64,000 nucleotides of DNA from Ranitomeya imitator. Taxonomy: Eukaryota. The notes beneath the pieces were generated by a model. That model worked only from the letters and a program-made list of their open reading frames with translations, was not told the DNA's origin and searched no databases. A program made the position numbers and the translations under genes. The DNA lies in assembly GCF_032444005.1 (NCBI RefSeq), contig NC_091282.1, forward strand, positions 470,456,001-470,520,000, written 5' to 3'. Positions 19,111-62,237 of this stretch are shown one piece after another. The stretch's first letter is position 1; each line of letters opens with the position of its first letter.

Positions 19111-19132
19111 TTTAAACCCCCCAATTATAACT

Positions 19133-19315
19133 GAAACCCTAATCCGAACACACCCCTAACCCTAATCTCAATGGTAACCCTAACCACACCCCTAACCCTT
19201 ACACGCTCCTAACCCTAATCCCAACCCTATTCCCAATCGTAAATGCAATCCAAACCCTAACCCTAACTTTAGCCACAACCCTAACCCTAACTTTAGCCCC
19301 AACCCTAACCCTAAC
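19133..19315 (+). repeat. Degenerate telomere-like (CCCTAA)n tract
   Basis: Multiple AACCCTAACCCTAA units interspersed with CTTTAGCC variants; resumes as CCTAAC at 20082. Confidence 0.8.
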
Positions 19316-20081: not shown

Positions 20082-21449
20082 CCTAACCACCTGTTTTTTG
20101 CAGGACGAGTAGACGTTTTTATTGGTAACATTTTCGGGCACGTTACATTTTTTAATCGCTTTTTATTCCGATTTTTGTGAGGCAGAATGACCAAAAACCA
20201 GCTATTCATGAACTTCTATTGGGGGGCGGGCGTTTATACCGTTCCGCATTTGCTAAAATTGATAAAGCAGTTTTATTCTTCGGGTCAGTACGATTACAGC
20301 GATACCTCATTTATATCATTTTTTATGTTTTGTCGCTTTTATACGATAAAAACTCTTTTATAGAAAAATAATTATTTTTGCATCGCTTTATTCTGAGGAC
20401 TATAACTTTTTTATTTTTTTGCTGATGATGCTGTTTGGTGGCTCGTTTTTTGCGGGACAAGATGCCGTTTTCAGCGGTACCATGGTTATTTATATCCGTT
20501 TTTTTGATCGCGTGTTATTCCACTTTTTTTTCGGTGGTATGATAATAAAGTGTTGTTTTTTGCCTTTTTTTATGGTGTTCACTGAAGGGGTTAACTAGTG
20601 GGACATTTTTATAGGACGGGTCGTTATGGACACGGAGATACTAAATATGTGTACTTTTTTTATTTAGATAAAGGAATGTATTTATTGGAACAATATATTT
20701 TTTATATAATTATCTATTTAGGAATTTTTTTTTTCACACAAGTAAAAAATTTTATTTTTGTACTTTGCCCCGGGGGATAGAGGGGGGGGCATCACAGTTT
20801 GTTGACAGATCGCTGATCTGACACTTTGCCGTGCACTGTGTCAGATCAGCGATCACACAGGCAAAGCAGGGAAGCTTACCAGTGCTTGCTCTGAGCAGGC
20901 GCTGGTAAGCCACCTCCCTGCAGGACTCGGATGCAGCCCACCGGCCATTTTGGATCCGGGCCTGCAGGGAGGAACAGGTAAGAGACCCTCGCAGCAATGT
21001 GATCACATCGCGTTGCTCCGAAGGTCTCAGGGAAGCACGCAGCGAGCCCTCTCCCTGCACGATGCTTCCCTATGCCGCCGGAACACTGCAACGCCGGGGG
21101 TTAATGTGTCGGGGACAGTCCGTGACTGCTCCTGGAACATAGTGCCAGATATCAGCTGCGATAGTCAGCTGACACCCGGCCGCGATTATCGGCGCTCCCC
21201 CCGTGAGAGCGGCTGATCGCGCTGGACGTACTATTCCGTCCTTGGGATGTAGGGCCCATCCCACATGGACGGAATAGTACATCCAATGGCAGTAAGGGGT
21301 AAATTCTTAACTTTAGATCCCTCTTCTGGCTTCAGTAGGACAGACAACAAAAAAAGACTGAAAGGTGAAAGAAATTTTCACAGCATCTTATTTTGATTTT
21401 TTCTAAAAAACTGTATTATTTACTTAAAGGGGTTGTACCACAAACAAAG

Positions 21450-22424
21450 TGTTAGGACTGGCGGAACGCACCTAGACAGATGATAAAGGTGCGTTCGCAG
21501 TCCGGGGTCCACCGTGCAGGTGAGAACCTGCTGCTAGCAATTTGCAGACAATATGGCGGTACACTAAAGTATACACGCGTGGGTTAAACCTCACACAGCG
21601 TGAAGAAAGCGATCCTGTTAATTCACAGGACCGCAGTACCGCACTAGTGCGCGAGCAAGTGGTCAGCGGACTTAACCCCAGAAGGGATTGAAGCCCGATT
21701 AGACCCTTGCTGGCGTAACACCGCAACTGGGTGTGTAGAGAACCTTAAGAAATATAAGTGCACAAGAGTGCAAGCGATGCCGCACTAACGGACGCCACTA
21801 ACCACCCAGACTCGGGTATGGAAAGCGCAAGGCAGGCGCACGGCGCCGTACTGGCAGGCACAGCTACAGGACGCTGAGATGTGTGTTTAGTGCTGTAGGC
21901 TAAGTCGGGCGCTAGATAGCAGCCATACACCTTCCGCGAACAGACATTCAATAGGGTAGGGGTTTCCAAGGACGACTTGCACTCACAACATACACACATA
22001 AGCAATTGTCAGATAATACTAGCGCATGGCCGTGCGGTCATGCGCAGTTTATATAGCAGCAGCACAGGAAGAGGCCACAGCACCTTTGCCCTTCCAGGGC
22101 CTGCAAAGAGGACCAATGGAATGTGCTGCAGAGCCTGAGCACATGACCCTCGATCTCCAACGGGAGACCTTATGCTGGGCATGCTCAGTACGTGCAGACA
22201 AGGACTTAGTCCCAGGGAAGTCCGCTCGCTGCTGACCAGCATTGACTTTAATGGCAGAGACTGGAGAAGCAGCAGTAACTCTCAGAACAGAGTGAGGATG
22301 AGCAAGACGCTGGGACCGACGTCTTTGCTGAGCAGACTCCACTGCGGCTGGACAAGAATGGGAGACCGCAGCGGAGGCGGCTCGAGATTCCCCCTGTGCA
22401 GAAGCGGGAACTCGACCCCTAACA
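21450..22424 (-). repeat. 3' LTR
   Basis: Direct repeat of 26598-27572; preceded on the - strand by the polypurine tract AGGAGGGGGGGGTAA. Confidence 0.97.
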
Positions 22425-25400
22425 TTACCCCCCCCTCCTAGGGCCCCCCCCTCCTTGGGCCTCGCTACGTTCGAAGGCAGCAATGAGCTGCGGAGCCCGA
22501 ATGTGCTCAGCAGGCTCCCAGGATCTATCCTCAGGGCCGTAACCCCTCCAGTCCACTAAATAAAATTTTTTGCCACGAACCACCTTGTACCCCAAGATCG
22601 CGTTCACCTCGTAATCGTCCGTAGACGAACCCGACGTCTCAGTAGATGACTCAGAAAACCGGGACATGTAGACGGGCTTAAGGAGGGACACGTGAAAGGT
22701 GTCGGTGATACCCAGGCGTGGAGGAAGGGCCAGACGGTAAACCACAGGATTAACCTGTTCGAGGACCTTAAAAGGACCTAAGTAGCGAGGTGCAAACTTG
22801 GTGGACTCAACTCGCAGCCTGATGTTACGGGCGGAGAGCCACACTAAGTCGCCAGGAGCAAAGGTTGGAGCGGGGCGCCGATGTGCATCGGCGGAGGACC
22901 TCATTCTCTCCTTGGAAGCCTGAATAGCATCCTGAGTGCGATCCCAAATGTCCCGTGCCTCCACAGCCCAGTCTGCCACCCTGGAATCGGCGGAAGACAC
23001 GGGCATGGGCACAGGTACCCTCGGATGCTGACCATAGTTAAGGAGGAATGGAGTCTGTCCAGTGGAATCAGCGACAGCATTGTTAAGAGCAAACTCCGCC
23101 CACGGTAGCAAAGATGCCCAGTCATCCTGCTTAGCAGAAACAAAATGTCGCAGATATGTGACCAAGGTCTGGTTGGCTCTCTCTACCAACCCATTCGTCT
23201 CGGGATGATAAGCCGAAGAGAGATTCAACTCGATACTGAGAAGACGACAAAGCTCTCTCCAGAACCGAGACGCAAACTGGGGACCTCGGTCACTGACAAT
23301 TTTGTCTGGCATACCGTGAAGACGAAAGATGTGTTTGACAAACAACGCTGCCAAGGCCCGTGCAGAAGGTAACCGGGGAAGTGGCACCAAATGCACCATT
23401 TTAGAAAAATGGTCGGTGATTACCCAAATAATGGTACAGCCACGAGACTTGGGCAAACCCACAACAAAATCCATCCCGACCATTTCCCAGGGCCTGTCTG
23501 CCACCGGCAGAGGGTATAACAAACCAGCTGGCCGTTGTCGGGAAGACTTATTCTTGGCACAAGAGACACATGCCCGAACGTAGTCTCCGACGTCACGAAC
23601 CATATGTGGCCACCAGGACGTCCTCGCCAGTAGCTCAGAGGTCCTTTTAGCCCCAAAGTGTCCACCCACTCTGGACGAATGAGCCCAAGAGAGAACCTCC
23701 GGACGCAAATTGATGGGAACAAAAGTCTTGCCCGGGGGCACAGACTCCAGCGAAACCGGAGCTACAGTTCTCAGACTCTCCGAAGGGACAATGAGCCGAG
23801 GCTCGTCCTCCTCCTCCTCAGCTGACACGAAGGAGCGAGAGAGAGCGTCGGCACGAATGTTCTTCTCCCCGGCGAGATAATGTAGGGTAAAGTGGAACCG
23901 GGAGAAAAACAAGGACCATCTGGCCTGACGAGAATTCAGCCGCTGGGCTGTTTGTAAATAGACCAAATTCTTGTGATCCGTGAAAACCTGGAATGGGAAT
24001 CGGGCACCCTCCAAGAGATGTCTCCACTCAGAAAAGGCCAACTTCATTGCCAACAACTCTCTATCCCCGATGGAGTAATTTCTCTCCGCTGGTGTGAAGG
24101 TCTTAGAGAAAAAGAAGCATGGATGCTTCCGACCCTGAGCATCCTTTTGATAGAGGACTGCTCCAGCACCAACGGATGAGGCATCCACTTCCAAAAGGAA
24201 TGGCTTACCCACATCGGAACGATGTAAGATAGGAGCGCTGGCAAAATGGGTCTTTATAGAAGAGAAGGCCTTGGAGACCCCTTCGGACCACAATTTGGGA
24301 TTCGCTCCCTTCTTGGTGAGGGATACCAAGGGAGCTACCAAAGTTGAAAAGTGGGGAATGAACTGGCGATAGTAATTTATGAACCCCATAAAGCGCTGCA
24401 CCGCTTTAAGAGAATGGGGTTCCTGCCAGTCCATCACTGCTTGTAGTTTGGCAGGATCCATAGCCAATCCCTGGGCCGAGACAATATAGCCCAGGAAAGG
24501 CAAGGACTCCTGTTCAAACACACACTTCTCCAACTTTGCATACAAGGAATTTGCCCGTAAGAGTTCGAAGACTCTGCCAACATCTCTCCGGTGGGAGTCA
24601 ATATCTGGAGAAAAGATGAGAATATCATCCAGATAGACTACGACCGAGGTAGAAAGCATATCCCGGAAGATATCGTTGACGAAGTCCTGAAAAACGGCTG
24701 GGGCATTACAGAGCCCGACAGGCATCACCAGGTACTCATAGTGCCCATCCCTGGTATTGAAAGCCGTCTTCCACTCGTCCCCCTCACGGATACGAATCAG
24801 ATTGTAGGCACCCCGCAGATCTAACTTGGTGAATATTTTAGCTCCCCTTAACCTGTCAAAGAGCTCCGATATCAGGGGCAACGGGTATTTATTCTTAATG
24901 GTGATAGCATTGAGACCCCTGTAATCGATGCAAGGACGTAACTCTCCGTTCTTCTTCTGCACGAAGAAGAATCCCGCCCCTGCCGGAGACACTGACTTCC
25001 TTATAAATCCTCTTGCTAAATTCTCCTGAATGTATTGAGACATAGCCTCCGTCTCAGGGAGAGAGAGGGGATATACCCTTCCCCTAGGAGGTTCAGCTCC
25101 CGGCAAGAGGTCGATAGGACAGTCGTAAGGGCGATGGGGCGGTAGAGTCTCAGCAGCCTTTTTAGAGAACACGTCTGCATAACACCAATAATACCTGGGA
25201 AGCGACGAGAGATCTGCGGGTACCTGGGTAGTAGAGACCTGTACACACTCACTCACACATCTGCCCAAACATGACTTACTCCAGCCCAATATTTTCCCTG
25301 AGGACCACTCAATATGTGGCGAGTGGAAACGGAGCCAGGGTATTCCCAGCAAAATCTCATCCATTCCCTCAGGAAGGACAAGAAGGGAAATAATCTCCTG

Positions 25401-25697
25401 GTGGGAAGGAGACATGGACAGCGATAACGGGACTGTCTGGTGCGTGATTTGCAGTGGGAGTGTTGCCCCATTCACAACTCTAACCGTTATTGGTTTGGCG
25501 AGCATGACCAGTGGTATAGCATGACGTGTAGCAAAAGCAGAGGACATGAAACTTCCCTCTGCTCCTGAATCCACACAAAGGTCGACTGTAAGAGTGGAGG
25601 AGCCTAACAGGATTGTCCCTTTAAAGGACAGTTTGGAGGAGAATGCTGCTGTGTCTAGTGAACCTCCCCCAATGGCCACTAGACGCGATCGTTTCCC
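22425..25697 (-). CDS. pol: Pol polyprotein (protease-RT-RNase H-integrase-chromodomain), expressed by -1 frameshift
   Basis: ORF 22425-25712 (1095 aa): LCVDSGA protease, YLDDILIFS RT, VDASSVGAGAVL RNase H, H-H-C-C plus DDE integrase, GPF motif, chromodomain YEVNAIL...YLVDWRGYGPEDRSWEP. Confidence 0.96.
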   Translation of the reverse strand, partial: GKRSRLVAIGGGSLDTAAFSSKLSFKGTILLGSSTLTVDLCVDSGAEGSFMSSAFATRHAIPLVMLAKPITVRVVNGATLPLQITHQTVPLSLSMSPSHQEIISLLVLPEGMDEILLGIPWLRFHSPHIEWSSGKILGWSKSCLGRCVSECVQVSTTQVPADLSSLPRYYWCYADVFSKKAAETLPPHRPYDCPIDLLPGAEPPRGRVYPLSLPETEAMSQYIQENLARGFIRKSVSPAGAGFFFVQKKNGELRPCIDYRGLNAITIKNKYPLPLISELFDRLRGAKIFTKLDLRGAYNLIRIREGDEWKTAFNTRDGHYEYLVMPVGLCNAPAVFQDFVNDIFRDMLSTSVVVYLDDILIFSPDIDSHRRDVGRVFELLRANSLYAKLEKCVFEQESLPFLGYIVSAQGLAMDPAKLQAVMDWQEPHSLKAVQRFMGFINYYRQFIPHFSTLVAPLVSLTKKGANPKLWSEGVSKAFSSIKTHFASAPILHRSDVGKPFLLEVDASSVGAGAVLYQKDAQGRKHPCFFFSKTFTPAERNYSIGDRELLAMKLAFSEWRHLLEGARFPFQVFTDHKNLVYLQTAQRLNSRQARWSLFFSRFHFTLHYLAGEKNIRADALSRSFVSAEEEEDEPRLIVPSESLRTVAPVSLESVPPGKTFVPINLRPEVLSWAHSSRVGGHFGAKRTSELLARTSWWPHMVRDVGDYVRACVSCAKNKSSRQRPAGLLYPLPVADRPWEMVGMDFVVGLPKSRGCTIIWVITDHFSKMVHLVPLPRLPSARALAALFVKHIFRLHGMPDKIVSDRGPQFASRFWRELCRLLSIELNLSSAYHPETNGLVERANQTLVTYLRHFVSAKQDDWASLLPWAEFALNNAVADSTGQTPFLLNYGQHPRVPVPMPVSSADSRVADWAVEARDIWDRTQDAIQASKERMRSSADAHRRPAPTFAPGDLVWLSARNIRLRVESTKFAPRYLGPFKVLEQVNPVVYRLALPPRLGITDTFHVSLLKPVYMSRFSESSTETSGSSTDDYEVNAILGYKVVRGKKFYLVDWRGYGPEDRSWEPAEHIRAPQLIAAFERSEAQGGGGPRRGG
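25653..25697 (-). promoter_or_regulatory. Programmed -1 ribosomal frameshift signal
   Basis: G GGA AAC heptamer (25697-25691) in the gag frame, 6-nt spacer, then an 8-bp stem GTCTAGTG/CACTAGAC; pol is in the -1 frame. Confidence 0.85.
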
Positions 25698-26566
25698 GAC
25701 CGCCGCGGACATTTATTGGCGTAATGTCCATGTTGTCGACAGTTATTACAAACTACGGGTACTCGAGCGGCTAGAGATTTAGGTCCCGCTCGAGAAACCT
25801 CCATGGCCTCATGAGAATCTGACGCCAAGACAGGAGATTCCAGAGGTCTGGCGAAAGTTGGAGCCAGCCGAAACCTCTGCCTACACTGGGTCCGCTCCAA
25901 CCTCCGCTCGTGAAAACGGAGGTCGATGCGGGTAGACACGGAAATAAGTTCCTCCAGTGTGGCCGGTATCTCCCTAGTGGCCAAGGCGTCTTTCACGTGG
26001 TCTGCCAGTCCCCTCCAGAACACCGGAATAAGAACTTTGTCTGGCCACTCTAACTCTGAAGCTAGAGTCCGGAACTGAATGGCAAACTGGCTGACCACGG
26101 AGGTACCCTGTGTAATGGACAACAATTGGAGTGCGGTGTCGTGGGTAACCCGAGGCCCTAAAAAGACCTGCTTCAGAGTGTCCAAGAAGAGAGGAGCACT
26201 CTGTACCACACGATCATCTCGCTCCCAGAGTGGCGTTGCCCACTCCAACGCCCTGCCCGACAAGAGAGATAGGATAAATCCCACTCTCGCCCGCTCCGTA
26301 GGAAAACGTGACGCCAGGAGCTCAAGATGTATAGAGCACTGACTCACGAATCCACGACAATGTTTGCTGTCGCCAGCAAACTTGTCAGGTAGTGGGAGAC
26401 GGGATAAAGTCGGAGCAGGGGTGGCAGTGGACAAACTGGCTGCGGCTACACTTGCAGCCTGCACAGCTACAGCAGTGACATCCACAGCTGAGGTTGTACG
26501 CTCAAGAGCCGCCAACCTTCCCTCCAGCTGCTGGATGTACCGCTGTAAACGCTGGTCGTCCGCCAT
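25679..26566 (-). CDS. gag: Gag (PEG10/RTL-like capsid with CCHC knuckle), 295 aa
   Basis: LPLPDKFAGD...CRGFVSQC...ALEWATPLWE capsid-like segment; CNNCRQHGHYANKC zinc knuckle. Confidence 0.95.
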   Translation of the reverse strand: MADDQRLQRYIQQLEGRLAALERTTSAVDVTAVAVQAASVAAASLSTATPAPTLSRLPLPDKFAGDSKHCRGFVSQCSIHLELLASRFPTERARVGFILSLLSGRALEWATPLWERDDRVVQSAPLFLDTLKQVFLGPRVTHDTALQLLSITQGTSVVSQFAIQFRTLASELEWPDKVLIPVFWRGLADHVKDALATREIPATLEELISVSTRIDLRFHERRLERTQCRQRFRLAPTFARPLESPVLASDSHEAMEVSRAGPKSLAARVPVVCNNCRQHGHYANKCPRRSGNDRV

Positions 26567-26585
26567 TTTTACTAGCCAGACCCTG

Positions 26586-26596
26586 GCGCTAGTATT
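26586..26596 (-). promoter_or_regulatory. Self-priming primer binding site (AATACTAGCGC)
   Basis: Lies 1 nt inside the 5' LTR boundary; perfectly complementary to GCGCTAGTATT at 27173-27163, which starts 30 nt downstream of the first T of TATATAAA (27203-27196). Confidence 0.85.
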
Positions 26597-26597
26597 C

Positions 26598-27572
26598 TGT
26601 TAGGACTGGCGGAACGCACCTAGACAGATGATAAAGGTGCGTTCGCAGTCCGGGGTCCACCGTGCAGGTGAGAACCTGCTGCTAGCAATTTGCAGACAAT
26701 ATGGCGGTACACTAAAGTATACACGCGTGGGTTAAACCTCACCCAGCGTGAAGAAAGCGATCCTGTTAATTCACAGGACCGCAGTACCGCACTAGTGCGC
26801 GAGCAAGTGGTCAGCGGACTTAACCCCAGAAGGGATTGAAGCCCGATTAGACCCTTGCTGGCGTAACACCGCAACTGGGTGTGTAGAGAACCTTAAGAAA
26901 TATAAGTGCACAAGAGTGCAAGCGATGCCGCTCTAACGGACGCCACTAACCACCCAGACTCGGGTATGGAAAGCGCAAGGCAGGCGCACGGCGCCGTACT
27001 GGCAGGCACAGCTACAGGACGCTGAGATGTGTGTTTAGTGCTGTAGGCTAAGTTGGGCGCTAGATAGCAGCCATACACCTTCCGCGAACAGACATTCAAT
27101 AGGGTAGGGGTTTCCAAGGACGACTTGCACTCACAACATACACACATAAACAATTGTCAGATAATACTAGCGCATGGCCGTGCGGTCATGCGCAGTTTAT
27201 ATAGCAGCAGCACAGGAAGAGGCCACAGCACCTTTGCCCTTCCAGGGCCTGCAAAGAGGACCAATGGAATGTGCTGCAGAGCCTGAGCACATGACCCTCG
27301 ATCTCCAACGGGAGACCTTATGCTGGGCATGCTCAGTACGTGCAGACAAGGACTTAGTCCCAGGGAAGTCCGCTCGCTGCTGACCAGCATTGACTTTAAT
27401 GGCAGAGACTGGAGAAGCAGCAGTAACTCTCAGAACAGAGTGAGGATGAGCAAGACGCTGGGACCGACGTCTTTGCTGAGCAGACTCCACTGCGGCTGGA
27501 CAAGAATGGGAGACCGCAGCGGAGGCGGCTCGAGATTCCCCCTGTGCAGAAGCGGGAACTCGACCCCTAACA
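26598..27572 (-). repeat. 5' LTR with TATA box
   Basis: Near-identical to the 3' LTR (four substitutions seen by eye); TATATAAA on the - strand at 27203-27196. Confidence 0.97.
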
Positions 27573-35474: not shown

Positions 35475-37081
35475 CAGTGGGGCAAAAAAGTATTTAGTCA
35501 GTCAGCAATAGTGCAAGTTCCACCACTTAAAAAGATGAGAGGCGTCTGTAATTTACATCATAGGTACACCTCAACTATGGGAGACAAACTGAGAAAAAAA
35601 AATCCAGAAAATCATATTGTCTGTTTTTTTAACATTTTATTTGCATATTATGGTAGAAAATAAGTATTTGGTCAGAAACAAAATTTCATCTCAATACTTT
35701 GTAATATATCCTTTGTTGGCAATGACAGAGGTCAAACGTTTTCTGTAAGTCTTCACAAGGTTGCCACACACTGTTGTTGGTATGTTGGCCCATTCCTCCA
35801 TGCAGATCTCCTCTAGAGCAGTGATGTTTTTGGCTTTTCGCTTGGCAACACGGACTTTCAACTCCCTCCAAAGGTTTTCTATAGGGTTGAGATCTGGAAA
35901 CTGGCTAGGCCACTCCAGGACCTTGAAATGCTTCTTACAAAGCCACTCCTTCGTTGCCCTGGCGGTGTGCTTTGGATCATTGTCATGTTGAAAGACCCAG
36001 CCACATTTCATCTTCAATGCCCTTGCTGATGGAAGGAGGTTTGCACTCAAAATCTCACGATACATGGCCCCATTCATTCTTTCATGTACCCGGATCAGTC
36101 GTCCTGGCCCCTTTGCAGAGAAACAGCCCCAAAGCATGATGTTTCCACCACCGTGCTTTACAGTAGGTATGGTGTTTGATGGATGCAACTCAGTATTCTT
36201 TTTCCTCCAAACACGACAAGTTGTGTTTCTACCAAACAGTTCCAGTTTGGTTTCATCAGACCATAGGACATTCTCCCAAAACTCCTCTGGATCATCCAAA
36301 TGCTCTCTAGCAAACTTCAGACAGGCCCGGACATGTACTGGCTTAAGCAGTGGGACATGTCTGGCACTGCAGGATCTGAGTCCATGGTGGCGTAGTGTGT
36401 TACTTATGGTAGGCCTTGTTACATTGGTCCCAGCTCTCTGCAGTTCATTGACTAGGTCCCCCCGCGTGGTTCTGGGATTTTTGCTCACCGTTCTTGTGAT
36501 CATTCTGACCCCACGGGGTGGGATTTTGCGTGGAGCCCCAGATCGAGGGAGATTATCAGTGGTCTTGTATGTCTTCCATTTTCTAATTATTGCTCCCACT
36601 GTTGATTTCTTCACTCCAAGCTGGTTGGCTATTGCAGATTCAGTCTTCCCAGCCTGGTGCAGGGCTACAATTTTGTTTCTGGTGTCCTTTGACAGCTCTT
36701 TGGTCTTCACCATAGAGGAGTTTGGAGTCAGACTGTTTGAGGGTGTGCACAAGTGTCTTTTTATACTGATAACAAGTTTAAACAGGTGCCATTACTACAG
36801 GTAATGAGTGGAGGAAAGAGGAGACTCTTAAAGAAGAAGTTACAGGTCTGTGAGAGCCAGAAATCTTGATTGTTTGTTTCTGACCAAATACTTATTTTCC
36901 ACCATAAAATGCAAAAAAAATGATAAAAAAAACAGACAATGTGATTTTCTGGATTTTTTTTTCTCAGTTTGTCTCCCATAGTTGAGGTCTACCTATGATG
37001 TAAATTACAGACGCCTCTCATCTTTTTAAGTGGTGGAACTTGCACTATTGCTGACTGACTAAATACTTTTTTGCCCCACTG
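35475..37081 (-). mobile_element. Full-length Tc1 transposon with ~200-bp TIRs
   Basis: TA|CAGTGGGGCAAAAAAGTATTTAG...CTAAATACTTTTTTGCCCCACTG|TA. Confidence 0.96.
35691..36713 (-). CDS. Tc1 DD34E transposase, intact ORF (340 aa from [10 protein letters not shown])
   Basis: [25 protein letters not shown]; no stops within ORF 35691-36752. Confidence 0.92.
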
Positions 37082-38534: not shown

Positions 38535-40186
38535 CAGTTAGGGCCAGAAATATTTGGACAGTGACAGAAGTTTTGTTATTTTAGCTGTTTACAAAAACAT
38601 GTTCAGAAATACAATTATATATATAATATGGGCTGAAAGTGCACACTCCCAGCTGCAATATGATAGTTTCCACATCCAAATCGGAGAAAGGGTTTAGGAA
38701 TCATAGCTCTGTAATGCATAGCGTCCTCTTTTTCAAGGGACCAAAAGTAATTGGACAATGGACTCTAAGGGCTGCAATTAACTCTGAAGGCGTCTCCTCC
38801 GTTAACCTGTAATCAATGAAGTAGTTAAAAGGTCAGGGGTGGATTCCAGGTGTGTGGTTTTGCATTTGGAAGCTGTTGCTGTGAGCAGACAACATGCGGT
38901 CAAAGGAACTCTCAATTGAGGTGAAGCAGAACATCCTGAGGCTGAAAAAAAAGAAAAAATCCATCAGAAAGATAGCAGACATGCTTGGAGTAGCAAAATC
39001 AACAGTTGGGTACATTCTGAGAAAAAAGGAATTGACTGGTGAGCTTGGGAACTCAAAAAGGCCTGGGCGTCCACGGATGACAACAGTGGTGGATGATCGC
39101 TGCATACTTAATTTGGTGAAGAAGAACCCGTTCACAACATCAACTGAAGTCCAGAACACTCTCAGTGAAGTAGGTGTATCTGTCTCTAAGTCAACAGTAA
39201 AGAGAAGACTCCATGACAGTAAATACAAAGGGTTCACATCTAGATGCAAACCATTCATCAATACCAAAAATAGACAGGCCAGAGTTAAATTTGCAGAAAA
39301 ACACCTCAAGAAGCCAGCTCAGTTCTGGAAAAGTATTCTATGGACAGATGAGACAAAGATCAACCTGTACCAGAATGATGGGAAGAAAAAAGTTTGGAGA
39401 AGAAAGGGAACGGTACATGATCCAAGGCACACCACATCCTCTGTAAAACATGGTGGAGGCAACGTGATGGCATGGGCATGCATGGCTTTCAATGGCACTG
39501 GGTCACTTGTGTTTATTGATGACATAAGAGCAGACAAGAGTAGCCGGATGAATTCTGAAGTGTACCGGGATATACTTTCAGCCCTGATTCAGCCAAATGC
39601 TGCAAAGTTGATTGGACGGCGCTTCATAGTACAGATGGACAATGACCCCAAGCATACATCCAAAGCTACCCAGGAGTTCATGAGTGCCAAAAAGTGGAAC
39701 ATTCTGCAATGGCCAAGTCAATCTCCAGATCTAAACCCAATTGAGCATGCATTTCACTTTCTCAAATCTAGACTTAAGACGGAAAGACCCACAAACAAGC
39801 AAGACCTGAAGGCTGCGGCTGTAAAGGCCTGGCAAAGCCTTAAGAAGGAGGAAACCCAGCGTTTGGTGATGTCCATGGGTTCCAGACTTAAGGCAGTGAT
39901 TGCCTCCAAAGGATTTGCAACAAAATATTGAAAATAAAAATATTTTGTTTGGGTTATGTTTATTTGTCCAATTACTTTTGACCTCCTAAAATGTGGAGTG
40001 TTTGTAAAGAAATGTGTACAATTCCTACATTTTCTATCAGATATTTTTGTTCAACCCTTCAAATTAAACGTTACAATCTGCACTTGAATTCTGTTGTAGA
40101 GGTTTCATTTCAAATCCAATGTGGTGGCATGCAGAGCCCAACTCGCGAAAATTGTGTCACTGTCCAAATATTTCTGGCCCTAACTG
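38535..40186 (+). mobile_element. Full-length Tc1 transposon with ~32-bp TIRs
   Basis: TA|CAGTTAGGGCCAGAAATATTTGGACAGTGACA and its exact inverse ending at 40186|TA. Confidence 0.96.
38894..39931 (+). CDS. Tc1 DD34E transposase, intact ORF (345 aa)
   Basis: N-terminal HTH with GRPR motif; [24 protein letters not shown]. Confidence 0.93.
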   Translation: MRSKELSIEVKQNILRLKKKKKSIRKIADMLGVAKSTVGYILRKKELTGELGNSKRPGRPRMTTVVDDRCILNLVKKNPFTTSTEVQNTLSEVGVSVSKSTVKRRLHDSKYKGFTSRCKPFINTKNRQARVKFAEKHLKKPAQFWKSILWTDETKINLYQNDGKKKVWRRKGTVHDPRHTTSSVKHGGGNVMAWACMAFNGTGSLVFIDDIRADKSSRMNSEVYRDILSALIQPNAAKLIGRRFIVQMDNDPKHTSKATQEFMSAKKWNILQWPSQSPDLNPIEHAFHFLKSRLKTERPTNKQDLKAAAVKAWQSLKKEETQRLVMSMGSRLKAVIASKGFATKY

Positions 40187-49106: not shown

Positions 49107-49377
49107 NNNNNNNNNNNNNNNNNNNNNNNNNNNNNNNNNNNNNNNNNNNNNNNNNNNNNNNNNNNNNNNNNNNNNNNNNNNNNNNNNNNNNNNNNNNNNN
49201 NNNNNNNNNNNNNNNNNNNNNNNNNNNNNNNNNNNNNNNNNNNNNNNNNNNNNNNNNNNNNNNNNNNNNNNNNNNNNNNNNNNNNNNNNNNNNNNNNNNN
49301 NNNNNNNNNNNNNNNNNNNNNNNNNNNNNNNNNNNNNNNNNNNNNNNNNNNNNNNNNNNNNNNNNNNNNNNNNNNNN
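49107..49377. other. Assembly gap (271 N)
   Basis: Run of N characters. Confidence 1.
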
Positions 49378-51471: not shown

Positions 51472-52134
51472 AAGCCGCCAGGTTCAGGGACCCAATTCTA
51501 TAATTATAAACAGTTTTTCTCTGTAGTGCTGTTGGCCCTAGTCGACAGCAACTACAGGTTTATAATTGTAGATATTGGGGCCTATGGGAGAACTGGAGAC
51601 TCTAGAGTCTTCAGTTCTTCCATTATGGGTCGGCGGCTGCGCAACAATGAATTGGATCTCCCACCCCCAAGTCACATACCAGGGGCTAATTTGGATGCGG
51701 TCCCTTACATGATGGTTGCAGATGAGGCCTTTCAATTATCAAGGAACGTCATGAGACCCTATCCACGGAGAGGCCTGGACTACCGGTGCAGAATCTTTAA
51801 TTTGCGTCTTTCCCGTGCCCGCCATCTGGTCGAGTGTTCATTCGGCATTCTCAGTGCAAAATGGCGGGTCCTTCAGTCTGCAATCCAACTGAGTGAAGGC
51901 AATGTAAATGGCGTGATTAAAGCATGTGTTGTTCTTCACAACTTTACAAGAGACCATGATTGCCCATCATCTGCTGCAGATGACATTGATTATGCAAATA
52001 CTGTCTTGACAACTACACGTGTTCGTCCTTCACGTCGTCAGCCCTCTGGCCTAAAAGTTCGGGATGTTTTAACCAATTTTTTTGTGTCACCAGAGGGATC
52101 TACGGTTTGGCAAGACAATGCTGTTTTGCCTTAA
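51472..52134 (+). pseudogene. Harbinger (HARBI1-like DDE_Tnp_4) transposase, N-terminal half deleted
   Basis: KPPGSGTQFYNYKQFFSVVLLALVDSNYRF...GRTGDSRVF...VADEAFQL...RIFNLRLSRARHLVECSFGILSAKWR...ACVVLHNF. Confidence 0.88.
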
Positions 52135-52443: not shown

Positions 52444-54130
52444 TTACAGGTTATGGTAGGTTGGGGGTGGTGATGGTGATGGCGGGTGTCCAGCATGTGC
52501 GGAACTTGGCCTGGGTGGTTGACCAACCACTCTGTCTACCTGTGTTAGTGCAGATATAAATTGCGGGTGTTGCTGCAAGTTGCGATCATGTGTATGAGCT
52601 AACACTTGATGTTGAGGGTAGAAGGGCATCAAGTCCTGGGTACTGGATTGACCCATTTGGTCAGAACCCCCAATATGGCCATGTCGAGCAGACACATGTT
52701 GGGACCAGCCTCCAAACATGTGTCTGTTCAAGTGGTCAGATTGGGGATGTGCTGGAAAATCATAACTACCCCTGTTTTGGGCTTGTTGTGTGGTTTGTGC
52801 AGGCTGTTGTTGGGGAGCTAGAGGTTGCGGGGGTGGTGCTGACACAGTTTGTGATTGGTCCTGTGGAAGGTCTTGCACCGCCAGAAGGTTTGTAGATGAC
52901 ATTTGCCACCGTTCCAGATAATTAAAGATATTAGTGGGGTTGTTTGGGGGTGTTGCCGCATCTAGCAAAATTTGGATGCAACCTCTGGTCCGCAGCCTGA
53001 GCGAGCGGGGAATGGGCCGTAAATAGCGGGCAAGACTGCGGAAGTAAGCTTCCTCCCCATCATCATTGGCAGCTCGGGACAAATAGTCCAACACCCCGGT
53101 ATCAACTTGCCTCCTGGTGCCAATGTTCAAAGCCACCCTTCTGCGACGACCACGGTTTGGTCTGGTAGTAGGCTATGATGATGTATCCAGAGCCAATGTT
53201 GGACTGCTGCTCTGGCCTCCTTCATCAACCTCAGGATTTGCCTCCTGTGGAGCGGAAGACGCTGCTGCTGGTTGTGGTGGTGGGTGGTTGCTGCCTGCTG
53301 CTTGCCCAGATGGTCCAGCCATTTCTGCATCTTCAGCAACAGGGTCAATCAGCAACTCTGAGTCAGATCCAGTCTCTCTTTCAGTCAGATTTGACTCTGT
53401 TCTGTATTTCACAAAAGATTATTTATATTAAAAAATACCTACATATTCACATCATAAGATGTGTAACATATTTGTAGACATGCATGCACTTACGGTCATA
53501 GCTCCATCACCGGGGCAAGAAAATTTAGACGGTCATAATAAAGGTATTTCCTTTTTTGGGGGGCTGCATCACCACTCCGACCAGAAAGTTGTCGTTCACT
53601 GCGGTATTGGTCCCGGCAACTCCGCCAGCGTCTATTTACATCATTGACTGCAAATATACAAAATATTTGATATAAATATCACACACAAACAGTTACAGGG
53701 TTTGCAATAACACATGGGCCCAGGAGGCTAGGGGGACATAAAATTCCTTTGGCCCTATATTAACGGACTATAGCTAAAATAATTTCAATCCATATTTGTG
53801 TCTCTTGGTAATGTTTTTGCATCTTCAACCAAGAGCATGGATGATTTACTCCCATCATAAACAAAACACATATGATGGTTTCAGGCTTATTTTTTTATCA
53901 TGAAAAATCAAATAATAAACATCATTTTTTGGTGAAGAATGGTACTTACATATTTCTTGCTGAACCTCTTGAGGTCGCTCATCAAAATCGGGGAACATGT
54001 GGCGACATATTGCCCTCCATGCTGCGTCTTTACGTGCACGGTCCGCATAATGTGCGTCGCGTTGGTCCCATAATTCGGGCCTATCATGGACCAGAGCAAT
54101 GAGCATCTCCACATTAATATGCCTGGCCAT
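52444..54130 (-). pseudogene. Harbinger Myb/SANT-like (MADF) protein gene, 3 exons, two nonsense codons
   Basis: Exons 54130-53950, 53647-53494 and 53401-52444 have GT-AG boundaries and join in frame (1293 nt). MADF motif LIALVHDRPELWD...RKDAAWRAIC...RRWRSCRDQY; in-frame TGA at 53498-53496 and TAG at 53175-53173. Confidence 0.8.
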
Positions 54131-56149
54131 GCTGCTACAACAGAACACTCCGTGGAGGCGTGCTTCCTGGTTTGCAATCCAGCGTGGGCCAGAAATTAGC
54201 ATGCCAAAGCTTCCTGATAATGGATGATTCAATTTCCTGTCACCTGGAGAAGTCTTCCGTATTTCTCGCAATGCACACGCATGGTCCGTATGTAATCCGA
54301 TTTTTTCTCGCACCCATAGACTTGCATTGGCGATTCTCGGCCGAGATACGCTGACAATCGCAGCATGCTGAGATTTCACTCGGATCCGGAATACGGCCGA
54401 GAAAATATCGGATGATGGGAGCTGCCCCATAGATTAACATTGGGACGAGTGCTATGCGATTTTTTAGCGCACTGCACTCGTCCGTAATGCGGTCTAGTGT
54501 GACCCCGGCCAAAGGGGGAGACACGACATGCGCTGTACTAGTACAGGGCATGTCGTGAAGGGGTTAATGACAAATAGAATGATAACATCAGATATCAATA
54601 TAGTTATACATTTCCAGGCATAGTACCATTCAGGGTTTTAAAAACGGAAACGTTGTTATTGTCTAGTTATTTTCTAAAACATACAGGTTATGGAAAAAGA
54701 CAAGTCATCTTCAGCAATGTATGGAATGGAAACTATGAACAAAGATAAGGACAGTTCTCCATTCCTTGTGTATGTAACAAAATTCTATTGATTACTGTAC
54801 ATATGAAGGTAATTTTACAAGGCATAAATTCTATTTGAACATTCAGAGAGCTTATATTCCTGTGGAGAAAAATGATCCACGGTATTGTATTTGTGAACTG
54901 CATAAGTTCAAGCAGGGTGCAGCACTATAAATCTTTGAAATAAAAACCAAAGGGCAGTGTGGAAAGAAGAAGAATCACATATCACAAATAGTTACGAAGA
55001 GGGTAAATATCAGAGTCTTTATGCTGGATTTATTGCTTAATGTTAAAACAAGTAGCCTGGCAGTACATTGCCATGGCACATAGTATAACATTTTCCAGAC
55101 TCTGTCTCACATAGATACACTGAAGTAAAGGAATTTATTGAGTACCGAGACCCGGCAGGTCACAATAAATTTTGTTTAAGACTTGAAATAATTTTGTTTG
55201 CTGAAAAGCAAGGTGCTAAAAAATGGCAAGCTACTGTTTTTTTCAAACATATAGTTAATAGATGTTTCTAGTTATTATTCTAATTTGTTATAAAACAAAG
55301 AAACTTAAAAAAAGAAGGAAAATAAGTTCTCCTTTTGTGGTAGACCAGCAGAGTCTACCCTGATATCATCAAAAATACTTTCAAAACAGTCAGAAATGGC
55401 ATTATTAATTGAAATATCCTTCAGCTTAAAGGTCATGTAATGCCTCTATTTTTTGTATATTGCACATTATAATGAGAAGGAATCTTGTCGAACGGTTAAT
55501 AGAATTCATAAGTGTGCTTTGCAATAAGCACTTGGAGTATAAGAAGCAAAAGGCAAAAATAATCATTGAATTTTATAGTACAATTTTCTAGACATCTGTG
55601 ATCTGAGCACTTTTACTATGCAAGGTGGAGGAGGTGAGCTGTGGTGGTCACCTATTGTGAACGTAATGATTAGAGATGAGCAAACCCGAACTTACAAGCT
55701 CTGCGTTCATATCAGACAGTGTCTGGTGCTAAACACTGAGCACGAACTTTCCCTGTAAGTCAGTTGCAATGTTCGGAGTTCTGGGGAGAGAGAAATAGAT
55801 TTTTCTTACCCAGATCCAAAATGTTTGTTCAAGTTCAGGTACAGTCCTGGTACCTGAACTGAACTTTGGGATAAAGTTTTAATCAGGTACCAAAACCTGA
55901 GTTTCCATGGTTCTGGTAAAAAAAATAATTGAAACAATAGGTAATTTTTTGATGTCTCATTGTTTTAAAGAAGATACTCACACTTTAGATATGTGAATAT
56001 GTATCCATGAAACAAGCCTTTTATTTCTAAAAAATGGGGTTCTATCAATCTCCATACCTTGGTTCCCTGATTATCATTTCTCCTGGTTGTGACAGCAACT
56101 GTGAATGTAAAGGTGGTTTCAGACAGTTGTGCTCAAACGTTGACATACC

Positions 56150-58801: not shown

Positions 58802-61399
58802 TATATTCTAGGATGTAGATAAATAGGGGTACATTAATAACATAAGAAAAAGAAAAACATATGTCACGCACAACACTATTTCTGTACTATATGCATGATT
58901 CCTGTCATTTCTATAGGAAAACATATAGATTTACCAGCTGAAGTAGTAAAACACCTTCTTAAAGCAAGGATGAGAAGTATTGGCATTTTGCTTATTCCGA
59001 CATAAGACATGCATGTACGTCACACATTGGATTCCTGCGTATACAGCAAGCTCAGGAGCTGAGATCACTTTACAGGCAGAAGATGGCAGCTTTATCATCA
59101 ACAACCAACATCCATGTCTAACATCATTGACCATATCTAGTTCCAATTGTGTTCACTGTCAATGGGGTACTAATAGGCAGTCATGGGCCTGCTGAAGGCC
59201 CTCAGGGCTTTCATCCTAGCACTTTTTTGCTTCATATGGAAGATAACCATTTCAATAAAAACTATGATTTTCTATCCAGTATATAGTGTGGTAAAGTGAT
59301 GTCATGCAAAAAAACAAAACTTCAATTGGAAATGGATACTGAAAAATGTAATGGTTAAGCCTCTTAATACAGAGCATGGGAAAAAAAAAACAAAAGAGCA
59401 AGAAAATAAATAATGGTGAAAGCGGGAAGGGAATAAAAACTTATCGCTCAAAACATATGTACTCTACATTGTGGTTTTAAATATATATAGCATAAGAATA
59501 GTTAGTTTGTCCTTTATGTACAATGACTACCAGCAACTTGCAGTACATTGCTAACTGTTATCTTTGCTTATATTTTTGACCAAAACAAGACAATGCTTGA
59601 AATTGCAAAAAAAAATTGTACTGCTTTATTATGATAAAAAAAAGAATAGTCTAATAGTCAAACTGAAATAATAGAAAAAAAAATAAATGGACATAGAATA
59701 GATTTAATCAATTAATTGAATTATCAATTAATTTATATGTTGATATTAAACTGAAATAATGTACTGTATATTTTACTTTAATATTTGGTACAGTGCCATA
59801 TGAAAATGACTGCCTTTTCTATAACTGAACATGTGGCACATATAAATATTTTAAGATTTATGTGGTAAAGAGATTTGTTTTATTCAGTAGGGACTTTCTA
59901 GACTTTTTTAATATATGTTTTGATGTTCAATAAAGGGAAATTTTCCATTAAAAATTCAGTTTTCTCAAAGGCTTAGATTATTTTCATGAGTTCAAGGGCA
60001 TTTGTGATAAAAGTTTTAAAGTGAAACCAATTGAATTTCCCTTGATACTTATTAAAACTAGAAATTAACAATCTAGATTCTGGATATGCCTTTGACACTT
60101 GGCTCCTTTCAGTTTGACTAATGAAAACATGTTTAAGAATGACAATTTAAGTTTTAGGGTTCCTGTAGTTCACATTTTCATTGGTATTTGTAAGAAGCAA
60201 TTGTGCATAAAAGTACAATTCTGTCTAGTACAGGAATCAAAGACGTAGATATAGGGAGTACCTAGATAGAAGTCAAAATCGTCCATTTTAGGGGAATCAA
60301 AACCCTCTTCTACAATTATTAAAAATGGCACAAGCCCTGTTAAAGATTTTAAGTTGGGGACCAGTGGATTCAAAGTATGCATCCAAAAGAAAATATTGTG
60401 CAATGTCCTGACAAATTCTTTAATCTTTGTACTTAGAATTGTCAAATATTCTATAGAATATCTAAAACAAGACTGATCTTCTTGTGTTCTGATCTTACAA
60501 AGATTCAGCTTCAAAAGAAAAAAGCACCACAAACCGACCATGCAGTCCAATGTAATATAATTTTATTGATGTATAATTCAAGTAAGTGGAGGCAAAAAAA
60601 GGAAAATAAATGCAGGTAAGAAATAATGATACGGACCACAATGCAAAAGTGCAAAGAAAAAGGTGACGCACACCCAGGGGTAGAAAGAAAAAATAGAACT
60701 GGGTGAAACACAACGGTGTATATGGCAATAAGGATCAACATGAATCGTATATGCACAAAAATCACTAAAAAACAAAAATGTATCCAAAATGAAAGTGCAA
60801 ATGCAAAATCACAAGAAGAATTACCCTAGTATCAAAAACATGGGTATAATTATAAATCAAGCAATGATCAAAACTAATGCAATGATTAAAAATAAGCCAA
60901 AACACACAAATATGTGAAACACACGTTGTGCTGAGGTGATTCAGCTTATAATATTCATTTTTATTACCACACTTCCTTCATTTTTCTGACTTTTCATATA
61001 TCTGGAATTCCTGACAATGAAGCTGCAAGCTCTATGTTAAGTCAGTGTTCAATATGAAGCAAACCTTCTATTTCCTTTTCCTTTCTTTTAGAGATCTAAT
61101 CTACATAGCTAAGTCTTAATTTCAGTGTTTCACACATAATGGAATTGAAAAACCCCAACAATAGCAATTTTTTAATTAGGACTCCTTGCAATATTTCTTA
61201 TTGTCTTTTGTATCTATATGAAAGATTTACATAGCTCATTTTACATTTCTCTTTAATTTAATATAAATTGCCTTTTCAGCCAGGAAGAGAACAAGAACTC
61301 TAGTGCCATCTATTGGAAGTAGCAATCCTAACAGTCAATGTCGACCCTTTAACGAGCCTTGTCACATGACTTAGGATAAAAGCCAAACCAGAATCTCAA

Positions 61400-61444
61400 T
61401 TTGCAGACACTGTGTTTTGGGGTACTGCTCCTCATCGGTGCAAA
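61400..61444 (-). ncRNA. Type I hammerhead ribozyme motif, core-mutated copy
   Basis: - strand: TTTGCA CCGATGA GGAG CAGTA CCCC AAAA CACAGT GTC TGCAAA. Stem I is perfect, but the core has U4C and G12A changes. Confidence 0.75.
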
Positions 61445-61507
61445 GTGTGAGATCTGGATTGGGTGTAGGAGAGGCGTCTTACTGGGATCCAAGAGGTATC
61501 ATTTCTC

Positions 61508-61585
61508 CTTGCGGAGAGTGAAATGTTAAGCATGCCGAGATGAGGAGACTTAAAGCCGCAATGCTTCTCTGGGAAATATGCAAAT
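61508..61585 (-). promoter_or_regulatory. snRNA-type promoter motifs: octamer, SPH-like and PSE-like
   Basis: ATGCAAAT at 61578-61585; TTCCCAGAGAAGCATTGCGG (-) at 61575-61556; TCACTCTCCGCAAG (-) at 61521-61508, identical in unit 2 at 61838-61825. Confidence 0.55.
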
Positions 61586-61716
61586 TGTCTCTTCAGAGAG
61601 GAAAAGGACTAGAACTCTAGTGCCACCTATTGGAAGTAGCAATCCTACCAGTCAATGTCGGCCCTTTAACGAGCCTTGTCACATGACTTAGGATAATAGC
61701 CAAACCAGAATCTCAA

Positions 61717-61761
61717 TTTGTAGACACTGTGTTTCGGGGTACTGTCTCTCGTCAGTGCAAA
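61717..61761 (-). ncRNA. Type I hammerhead ribozyme motif, intact catalytic core
   Basis: - strand: TTTGCA CTGACGA GAGA CAGTA CCCC GAAA CACAGT GTC TACAAA. CUGANGA, GAAA and GUC are intact; stem II has two A-C mismatches. Confidence 0.85.
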
Positions 61762-62237
61762 GTATGAGATCTAGTTTGGCTGTATGAGAAGCGTCTGACC
61801 GGGATCTAAGAAGTATCATTTCTCCTTGCGGAGAGTGACATGTTAAGCATGCCAAGATAAGGAGACTTAAAGCCACAATGCTCCTCTGGCAAATTTAATT
61901 TCAGAAAAATGTCAACTCATAACTATTAATTAAACTCTGATATAGAACAAATATATTTACAGATATGCGAAGATCAATTAATATTTGCTATAACATGACA
62001 ACATTTTTTATAAAATATATGTATAAATAATCTATATACATTTATAATACACTTTATTTGTTTAATTCTCTATAAATATGATATATTTGGTATATAACAA
62101 AAATAAAATATTTACATATATACATACAATACAGTTAATATTTGCTATATAATATATTTGATATTTGCTATATGTATTATAAAAATTACCTAGACACTGC
62201 TGTATCAGAATAACTACATATATATGCTAGAGTAGTA

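What the first reader, a model, noticed from the sequence alone, without database searches (positions are those of the whole stretch)
61275..61894. Tandem 317-bp hammerhead-ribozyme repeat: a satellite-2/retrozyme-like self-cleaving RNA cassette with no protein gene
Each unit has a type I hammerhead on the - strand. The two-copy consensus is TTTGCA CTGAYGA GGGG CAGTA CCCC GAAA CACAGT GTC TGCAAA. Stem I extends a further ~16 bp past an internal loop (GCCAAACCAGAATCTCA pairing with TGAGATCTAGTTTGGC on the + strand). Stem III (ACACAGTGT) is a short quasi-palindrome suited to dimeric cleavage. Head-to-tail units would be processed into ~317-nt monomers that could circularise and be copied by a PLE-type RT in trans. 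This matches newt satellite 2 and metazoan non-LTR retrozymes (established). Whether this anuran-type family is described is unknown to me. The two copies here carry different lesions, so active members are probably elsewhere (inference).
Basis: partly seen in the sequence, partly recalled or inferred. Interest (0 to 1): 0.9.

Follow-up and report, generated by a model that had tools for sequence, protein, structure and literature searches.

The report
Decayed two-unit frog-type hammerhead retrozyme copy
This is a real but mutated two-unit copy of a very abundant small non-coding mobile repeat that carries a self-cutting hammerhead RNA motif, a kind of element known in amphibians since 1987, so it is genuine but ordinary.

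Summary
Window 61265-61894 is a 2.0-copy tandem repeat of 317 bp with 89% matches, and each unit carries a type I hammerhead motif on the minus strand.

Both local copies are damaged. Copy 1 has two core lesions (CCGAUGA and AAAA). Copy 2 has an intact core but two stem II mismatches and one stem I mismatch. Neither passes a strict descriptor. Rfam Hammerhead_1 scores copy 2 at 20.9 bits (gathering 34) and does not see copy 1.

DNA contigs from four organisms hold about 19,000-27,000 related pieces each, and their majority letters revert all six lesions to a canonical hammerhead.

The unit is non-coding with 44-45% GC, has an extended 17-bp distal stem I and a weak, quasi-palindromic helix III. 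It matches published amphibian non-LTR retrozymes and newt satellite 2, whose mean amphibian unit is 316 bp.

The two units differ by K2P 0.128, so this is an old, almost certainly dead insertion. Expression, cleavage and circularisation could not be shown.

The scan had already noted this kind of element many times in the same genome: 222 unchecked notes mention hammerheads. Verdict: a new member of a known kind, of low interest.

The parts
61265..61581 (-). Unit 1 of the 317-bp tandem repeat (the downstream unit in the ribozyme sense)
   Evidence: TRF; pairwise alignment has 37 differences in 317 columns; GC 0.454.
61582..61894 (-). Unit 2 of the tandem repeat (the upstream unit in the ribozyme sense); homology ends at 61894
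   Evidence: TRF; comparison of the boundary with the internal junction; GC 0.435.
61717..61761 (-). Copy 2 hammerhead. The core is intact (CUGACGA, GAAA, GUC). Stem II reads GAGA/CCCC, so 2 of 4 pairs are lost, and stem I reads UACAAA, so 1 of 6 pairs is lost. The predicted cut lies between 61723 and 61722.
   Evidence: Pattern match; Rfam RF00163 full-length match at 20.9 bits, E 0.0032, gathering 34; family majority C at 61721, 61745 and 61747.
61400..61444 (-). Copy 1 hammerhead remnant. It reads CCGAUGA (U4 to C) and AAAA (G12 to A), and stem II reads GGAG/CCCC. The former cut site lies between 61406 and 61405.
   Evidence: Sequence; no Rfam hammerhead match; family majority C at 61418, C at 61429 and A at 61437.
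61699..61781 (-). Extended helix I of copy 2. A distal stem of about 17 bp with one bulge (61765-61781 pairing with 61699-61715) is separated from the 6-bp proximal stem by an internal loop: UAC on the 5' side and U on the 3' side.
   Evidence: MFE fold, z = -5.1. The family variants at 61773/61774 (CU or UC opposite GG) both keep pairing through G-U.
61406..61722 (-). The 317-nt monomer that would be released between the two cleavage sites if both ribozymes were active
   Evidence: Positions of the two C17 residues. The fold of this decayed copy is unexceptional, z = -1.5.
61255..61262 (.). Left copy of the flanking direct repeat AATTTAAT (possible target-site duplication or A/T-rich target/tail)
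   Evidence: The same 8-mer lies at 61892-61899. A shared 8-mer arises in 6% of shuffled flanks, so this is only suggestive.
61892..61899 (.). Right copy of the flanking direct repeat AATTTAAT, overlapping the last 3 nt of unit 2 (61892-61894)
61578..61585 (+). Octamer ATGCAAAT, formed at the junction between the two units
   Evidence: Sequence. No majority difference is listed there despite very high depth. Any promoter role is untested.

Best explanation
The stretch is an old, inactivated two-unit insertion of a very high-copy, non-coding, non-autonomous retroelement of the metazoan 'non-LTR retrozyme' class, the same class as newt satellite 2.

The sequence evidence shows four things:
- Each 317-bp unit encodes a type I hammerhead on the minus strand.
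- The family's majority sequence has a canonical core: CUGAUGA, a GGGG-CAGUA-CCCC helix II, GAAA and a GUC cut site.
- Helix I has a 6-bp proximal part, a small internal loop and a 17-bp distal extension.
- Helix III is very short, and its segment ACACAGUGU is self-complementary.

The following steps are inferred from published work on amphibian retrozymes. Active multimeric copies are transcribed in the minus-strand sense. Two neighbouring hammerheads pair through helix III to form a double hammerhead and cut after GUC. [quoted passage not shown] A host tRNA ligase circularises them, and the circles or multimers are reverse-transcribed and integrated by a Penelope-like element's RT-endonuclease supplied in trans.

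The local copy can no longer do this. Copy 1 has lost two invariant core bases and copy 2 has lost half of helix II.
For: Repeat structure.

Motif and lesions.

Family abundance: summed contig depth in four DNA runs from four organisms is 10^5-10^6 inside the repeat, against about 11 in the unique flank, with 18,697-27,122 laid contigs per run.

Reversion of lesions: the majority letters revert all six lesions. 61418 T>C restores GAAA. 61437 G>A restores CUGAUGA. 61429, 61745 and 61747 T>C restore GGGG. 61721 T>C restores stem I. This holds in the DNA runs and again in four probable RNA runs.

Effect on folding: with those three letters per copy, the hammerhead pairing energy goes from +1.0 or -5.0 to -8.6 kcal/mol, and both copies satisfy the canonical scheme.

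Other tests: Rfam Hammerhead_1 matches copy 2 over the full model, E 0.0032. The helix III self-duplex is -7.0 kcal/mol against 0.0 for the hairpin. There is no ORF above 68 codons and GC is 0.44-0.45.

Literature: amphibian retrozymes have units of 330-350 nt and hammerheads that need dimers (PMC7229834). All seven sampled amphibians carry non-LTR retrozymes with a mean consensus of 316 bp (bioRxiv 10.64898/2026.07.22.740005).
Against: No experiment or raw-read data show cleavage, ends at GUC, or circles.

The RNA status of runs X15, X16, X31 and X34 is only a guess, and contigs cannot tell tandem DNA from circular RNA.

Neither local copy reaches Rfam's gathering score.

No Penelope-like RT lies in the window. 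Its presence in the genome rests on unchecked scan notes.

Many family copies share one fixed end near 61577-61579, which is not the cleavage site. The circle model does not predict this in any simple way.

Proper covariation statistics could not be computed, because family sequences are available only as summary tables.
Confidence: 0.85

Rival explanations
1. It is a SINE-like linear retroposon that merely carries a hammerhead. Units would be transcribed from an internal snRNA-type promoter as linear RNAs with fixed ends. They would then integrate by target-primed reverse transcription at A/T-rich sites, possibly by a LINE-type enzyme, with no circular intermediate.
For: Hundreds of contigs per run break into unrelated A/T-rich sequence at the same plus-strand positions, 61576-61579 (table 7). 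This is the same unit position at which the window array starts and ends.

Read on the minus strand, the consensus of those flanks in four organisms is ATTAAT(T/A)T followed by 7-12 A. The window's own flank reads ATTAAATTAAAGAGAAA.

An ATGCAAAT octamer sits at the unit junction.
Against: Exact multiples of the unit, and the arrays of other sizes noted elsewhere in the genome, fit copying of a multimeric or circular template better.

The flank consensus has low agreement, about 0.38.

Published axolotl data show abundant circles for the same kind of element (PMC7229834).

A/T-rich targets and variable target-site duplications also fit Penelope-type integration.
Confidence: 0.08
2. It is a detached fragment of the pseudo-LTR of an autonomous Penelope-like element, not a separate non-autonomous family.
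For: The 2026 preprint finds that Xenopus retrozyme families are sister to Penelope-like pLTR sequences. Scan notes report many Penelope-like elements and 'pLTR-only' insertions in this genome (unchecked).
Against: Published Penelope-like hammerheads are minimal variants that lack helix III and the loop-loop contacts (PMC7761336). This one has helix III, a helix II loop and an internally looped helix I.

Both ends of the array abut A/T-rich unique DNA, and no RT or GIY-YIG ORF lies in the window.

The number of related contigs fits an independently amplified family.
Confidence: 0.05
3. It is an ordinary local tandem duplication or satellite in which a hammerhead-like string occurs by chance and has no function.
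For: Both local copies fail strict hammerhead criteria and Rfam's gathering score.
Against: The family majority in at least four organisms is a perfect hammerhead at every lesion site. The chance expectation for the strict descriptor is 0.01 per 64 kb. The 33-nt core pattern had 0 matches in 100 shuffles.
Confidence: 0.02

Closest known systems
Newt/salamander satellite 2 and axolotl non-LTR retrozymes (Rtz331 with HHR_Amex1, Rtz353 with HHR_Amex2; Epstein & Gall 1987; Cervera & de la Pena 2020, PMC7229834)
   Same: Head-to-tail non-coding units of about 320-350 bp, each with one type I hammerhead. Helix III is very weak and palindromic, so efficient cleavage needs a dimer. Helix I is extended with an internal loop. 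Copy number is enormous.
   Different: Helix III here is 2 bp beyond A15.1-U16.1 with a 3-nt loop (CAG), not 1-2 bp with a tetraloop. The unit is 317 bp. Sequence homology to the salamander units was not tested, because no sequence was available. The host seems to be a large-genome frog-like chordate, which is unverified.
Vertebrate non-LTR retrozyme families catalogued in bioRxiv 10.64898/2026.07.22.740005 (57 Xenopus families, REP4_XT; all 7 sampled amphibians)
   Same: Same architecture and size (amphibian mean 316 bp). Mostly short arrays: 75% of families have at most 7 units. Many inactive copies.
   Different: None of the preprint's Xenopus primers matches this unit. The chromosome piece exceeds 660 Mb, so this is not Xenopus. 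I could not check whether this exact family is in their tables, because those supplements are not held.
Schistosoma mansoni Sm-alpha hammerhead (Rfam RF00163 Hammerhead_1)
   Same: Type I topology: a 6-bp proximal helix I followed by an asymmetric internal loop, a 4-bp helix II with a 5-6 nt loop, and a GUC cut site. The Sm-alpha loop layout (UAC opposite U) is from my memory, not from a tool.
   Different: Sm-alpha has a stable helix III and cleaves fast as a monomer. The local copies here score below Rfam's threshold.
Minimal hammerheads in Penelope-like element pseudo-LTRs (Cervera & de la Pena 2014; Lunse et al. 2017)
   Same: Tandem type I hammerheads that act as dimers. A likely evolutionary and functional link: RT supplied in trans.
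   Different: Those lack helix III nucleotides and loop-loop contacts, and they are attached to RT/GIY-YIG coding elements. This unit is stand-alone and has full peripheral elements.

Membership tests
Hammerhead ribozyme, type I (Rfam RF00163) | Conserved core CUGANGA ... GAAA | tested here: inconclusive
   Copy 2 meets it (CUGACGA, GAAA). Copy 1 does not (CCGAUGA, AAAA). The family majority meets it (61437 G>A, 61418 T>C).
Hammerhead ribozyme, type I (Rfam RF00163) | Cleavage triplet NUH (not G) at the base of helix III, followed by the helix I 3' strand | tested here: met
   GUC is present in both copies, with C17 at 61723 and 61406.
Hammerhead ribozyme, type I (Rfam RF00163) | Helices I and II base-paired, with the open end in helix I | tested here: inconclusive
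   Local copies: helix II has 3 of 4 pairs (copy 1) and 2 of 4 (copy 2); helix I has 6 of 6 and 5 of 6. The family majority has 4 of 4 G-C pairs and 6 of 6.
Hammerhead ribozyme, type I (Rfam RF00163) | Score at or above Rfam's gathering threshold (34 bits) | tested here: not met
   Copy 2 scores 20.9 bits, E 0.0032 on 91 nt. Copy 1 has no hit. There is no hit in the whole-window scan. An intact family member could not be scored, because no natural sequence was reachable.
Hammerhead ribozyme, type I (Rfam RF00163) | Self-cleavage activity | not testable with these tools
   This needs in vitro transcription of natural intact copies.
Metazoan non-LTR retrozyme | Head-to-tail repeats of about 170-400 bp, each with a type I hammerhead | tested here: met
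   Two units of 317 bp with one motif per unit.
Metazoan non-LTR retrozyme | Non-coding, GC below 50%, no LTRs | tested here: met
   The longest open frame is 68 codons and GC is 0.435-0.454. The only repeat is the tandem unit. PBS and PPT were not searched for specifically.
Metazoan non-LTR retrozyme | Dispersed at high copy number | tested here: met
   Between 18,697 and 27,122 related contigs per DNA run. Many break into unrelated flanks.
Metazoan non-LTR retrozyme | Target-site duplication longer than 4 bp, when present | tested here: inconclusive
   AATTTAAT lies at both ends, but 6% of shuffled A/T-rich flanks share an 8-mer.
Metazoan non-LTR retrozyme | Expressed as monomer-length linear and circular RNA | tested here: inconclusive
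   Family contigs occur in four runs guessed to be RNA, with zero depth on the flanks. RNA status is unproven, and contigs cannot show ends or circles.
Metazoan non-LTR retrozyme | Co-occurrence with autonomous Penelope-like elements | not tested
   None lies in the window. The only support is 84 unchecked scan notes elsewhere in the genome.
Amphibian-type (dimer-dependent) hammerhead | Weak helix III whose sequence can pair with a second copy to form a double hammerhead | tested here: met
   The ACACAGUGU self-duplex is 8 bp with a central A-A mismatch, at -7.0 kcal/mol. The hairpin is 0.0 kcal/mol.

The most novel reading that the evidence does not exclude
This frog-type family may not integrate from random points of a circle. 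It may have a fixed terminus at the octamer-bearing unit junction (61577-61579), about 145 nt downstream of the ribozyme cut site. That terminus is followed, in the ribozyme sense, by ATTAATTT and an A-run in thousands of copies across at least four species. This would point to site-specific priming of reverse transcription on the retrozyme RNA, or to mobilisation of a linear snRNA-promoter transcript with an A-rich tail. Either would make the still unknown integration step of animal retrozymes testable by sequence analysis alone.
Probability: 0.2. Interest if true: 0.5.

Novelty: new member of a known kind. Interest (0 to 1): 0.2.

Why it matters
On its own this locus matters little. It is a dead copy of a class of element that has been known in amphibians since 1987 and was recently surveyed across vertebrates.

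It is useful as a clean annotation. The repeat should be masked as a retrozyme, not treated as a gene or regulatory element.

It also documents a family with an unusually long helix I extension and a triloop helix III, present at very high copy number in several related species.

The one point that could reach beyond annotation is the apparently fixed element terminus away from the cleavage site. If confirmed genome-wide, it bears on how animal retrozymes are reverse-transcribed and inserted.

Tried and rejected
- Rfam at gathering score on the whole window, and at E<=10 on 751 nt, found no hammerhead. Copy 2 surfaced below threshold only on 91-nt inputs. Copy 1 never did.
- My strict type I descriptor found nothing in the raw window.
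- Searches for natural intact family members in metagenome contigs (two patterns) and in viral contigs found nothing. Because of this I could not build a covariance model, count covariation or score an intact copy with Rfam.
- A literature search for the core sequence string gave 0 papers.
- The held supplement of the 2026 preprint contains only primers, and none matches the unit.
- The whole-monomer fold is not more stable than shuffles on either strand, z = -1.5 and -1.0. The 'highly self-paired rod' feature is therefore not demonstrable on this decayed copy.
- Cofolding of two motif segments gave intermolecular distal-stem pairing, not a double hammerhead, and is uninformative.
- The protein-atlas look-up of the Gypsy polyprotein gave only 'Chordata' as a host hint.
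- I did not build a full-length family consensus. I examined only the majority letters at the six motif positions.
Full report
**What is there**

Tandem Repeats Finder reports one array at 61265-61894 with period 317, 2.0 copies, 89% matches and no indels. The two units align over 317 columns with 37 differences, 24 transitions and 13 transversions, giving a K2P distance of 0.128. The unit has 43.5-45.4% GC, and the longest open frame on either strand is 68 codons. No other copy or fragment lies in the 64-kb window.

The window around it is rich in transposons. It holds two Tc1/mariner transposase ORFs, a Harbinger-type DDE ORF, a MADF ORF and a complete chromodomain Gypsy polyprotein. It holds no Penelope-like RT.

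**The motif in the two local copies**

On the minus strand, copy 2 reads UUUGCA-CUGACGA-GAGA-CAGUA-CCCC-GAAA-CACAGUGUC-UACAAA. The stretch from CUGACGA to GUC occupies 61755 down to 61723. The core of copy 2 is intact, but two of the four helix II pairs and one of the six proximal helix I pairs are mismatched.

Copy 1 reads CCGAUGA and AAAA, so it has lost two invariant core bases (U4 and G12). It also has one helix II mismatch.

A strict type I descriptor finds no hit in the raw window, against 0.01 hits per window in 100 shuffles. Rfam finds nothing at gathering score, or at E<=10 on 751 nt. On a 91-nt input, copy 2 gives a full-length Hammerhead_1 (RF00163) match at 61717-61761 on the minus strand. 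The score is 20.9 bits with E 0.0032, below the gathering score of 34. Copy 1 gives none.

**The family supplies that support**

Contigs from four DNA runs of four different organisms were laid on the stretch. The unique flanks have a depth of about 11 in the best holder. Summed depth inside the repeat reaches 10^5-10^6, and 18,697-27,122 contigs per run match. The tool warns that summed depth is not a copy number, so I read this only as 'very many copies'.

At each of the six lesion sites, the large majority of the depth carries the letter that restores a canonical hammerhead:

| Position (+ strand) | Majority change | What it restores |
|---|---|---|
| 61418 | T>C | GAAA |
| 61437 | G>A | CUGAUGA |
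| 61429 | T>C | GGGG in helix II (copy 1) |
| 61745, 61747 | T>C | GGGG in helix II (copy 2) |
| 61721 | T>C | UGCAAA in helix I |

The same majority letters appear in four further runs guessed to be RNA, from three named organisms and one unlabelled sample.

When only those three letters per copy are put in, both motifs satisfy the scheme. They then have a 6-bp helix I, CUGAYGA, a 4-bp G-C helix II with a 5-nt loop, GAAA, helix III and GUC. The energy of the hammerhead pairing improves from +1.0 and -5.0 to -8.6 kcal/mol.

A subfamily with a different helix II loop (CAACA) and CUGAGGA is visible in the loose ends (table 7).

**Peripheral elements**

Helix I continues past an internal loop (UAC or CAC on the 5' side, U on the 3' side) into a distal stem of about 17 bp with one bulge. 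The 94-nt segment of copy 2 folds at -28.9 kcal/mol, z = -5.1. The family variants at 61773/61774 put CU or UC opposite GG, and both pair through G-U. This is weak support for conservation of the stem.

Helix III is only A-U, C-G and A-U around a CAG loop. As a hairpin it has no predicted stability (0.0 kcal/mol). Two copies of ACACAGUGU form an 8-bp duplex with a central A-A mismatch at -7.0 kcal/mol.

This is the situation described for newt and axolotl hammerheads, which cleave poorly as monomers and well as dimers (PMC7229834; PMC6155905). [quoted passage not shown]

The MFE fold shows a competing pairing of GCACUG with CAGUGU that would disrupt the active core in a monomer.

**Boundaries**

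Homology to the unit ends at 61894 on the right and begins at 61263-61265 on the left, so the array is an almost exact 2.0-mer. An 8-nt direct repeat, AATTTAAT, lies at 61255-61262 and 61892-61899. A shared 8-mer occurs in 6% of shuffles of these A/T-rich flanks, so a target-site duplication is possible but not shown.

At family level, hundreds of contigs per run break at 61576-61579 into sequence with low mutual agreement. This is the same unit position as the ends of the local array (table 7). Read on the minus strand, the consensus of those flanks in all four organisms is ATTAAT(T/A)T followed by 7-12 A.

The element terminus therefore appears fixed. It lies about 145 nt downstream of the cut site, at a junction that forms the octamer ATGCAAAT (61578-61585).

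**What it is and how it works**

All sequence-level features of a metazoan non-LTR retrozyme are met. The published life cycle runs as follows (PMC7229834; PMC7761336; bioRxiv 10.64898/2026.07.22.740005):

1. Multimers are transcribed.
2. The hammerheads cleave the transcript into monomers.
3. A tRNA ligase circularises the monomers.
4. A Penelope-like RT reverse-transcribes and integrates them.

None of these steps was observable here. The candidate RNA runs are contigs of unconfirmed type. They show zero depth on the flanks and the family inside, which fits either RNA or low-coverage DNA.

The local copy is old. If the two units were identical at insertion, each has accumulated about 0.064 substitutions per site. 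Both ribozymes are damaged, so this locus is almost certainly inert.

**Comparison with what is known**

The 2026 preprint reports non-LTR retrozymes in all seven sampled amphibians, with a mean consensus of 316 bp. It reports 57 families in Xenopus, most arrays with at most 7 units, and only one of nine tested Xenopus dimers active in vitro.

The present genome is not Xenopus, because scan notes place other findings more than 398 Mb before and 265 Mb after this window on the same piece. The host hint from a Gypsy protein is only 'Chordata', and 'frog' remains the first readers' guess.

I found no paper text containing the core sequence, and the preprint's primers do not match. The exact family may therefore be undescribed at sequence level. 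The scan itself has 222 unchecked notes on hammerheads in this genome, including tandem units of 312, 316, 331, 350-357 and 384 bp.

**Verdict**

This is a new member of a known kind, and this locus is a dead copy. Interest is low. The only thread worth pulling is the fixed terminus and A-rich flank pattern at family level.

Noticed in passing
window 61574-61579 (family level, table 7): Hundreds of contigs per run, in four organisms, leave the repeat at the same unit position. On the minus strand the flank consensus reads ATTAAT(T/A)T followed by an A-run of 7-12. This suggests a fixed element 3' terminus with an A-rich tail or a target preference, and it is not at the ribozyme cut site.
   Followed up: partly
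window 61578-61585: A canonical octamer, ATGCAAAT, is formed at the junction between the two units. At the left end of the array the homologous site reads ATATAAAT, with 2 nt missing. This may relate to the snRNA-type promoter proposed in another first-reader note (s1-288166). Function untested.
   Followed up: no
window 61410 onward (table 7; table 5c): A subfamily has a different helix II loop (CAACA instead of CAGUA) and CUGAGGA. One contig has helix II as GGGU/ACCC, a double change that keeps the fourth pair, but in a copy with a damaged core.
   Followed up: no
window 61723-61760, minus strand: In the predicted minimum-energy fold, GCACUG (the end of helix I plus the start of the core) pairs with CAGUGU (helix III). 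This is an inactive alternative conformer that would compete with the monomeric hammerhead.
   Followed up: no
window 61332 and 61649: Both units share C where most family depth in organisms C and D has A, while C is common in organisms A and B. This is a subfamily marker suggesting the window comes from organism A or a close relative. X1 also holds a 571-nt contig identical to 61100-61320.
   Followed up: no
window 61100-61260: Contigs from organisms C and D cover the unique left flank with several substitutions and 1-nt deletions, so the holders are related species. I did not establish whether the insertion itself is shared between them.
   Followed up: no
window 35691-36752 (-), 38894-39931 (+), 51526-52134 (+), 53855-54430 (-): Two Tc1/mariner (Sleeping Beauty-like) transposase ORFs, a Harbinger-type DDE_Tnp_4 ORF and a MADF-domain ORF. 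The neighbourhood is dense in transposons.
   Followed up: partly
window 22425-26566 (-): An intact 1095-aa Gypsy polyprotein (protease, RT, RNase H, integrase, chromodomain) with an overlapping 295-aa upstream ORF. This agrees with the first-reader note on a young Gypsy element.
   Followed up: partly
window 49107-49377; 60861-60895; 62124-62173: A 271-nt run of N (left untouched) and two short A/T-rich tandem repeats with periods of 18 and 23.
   Followed up: no
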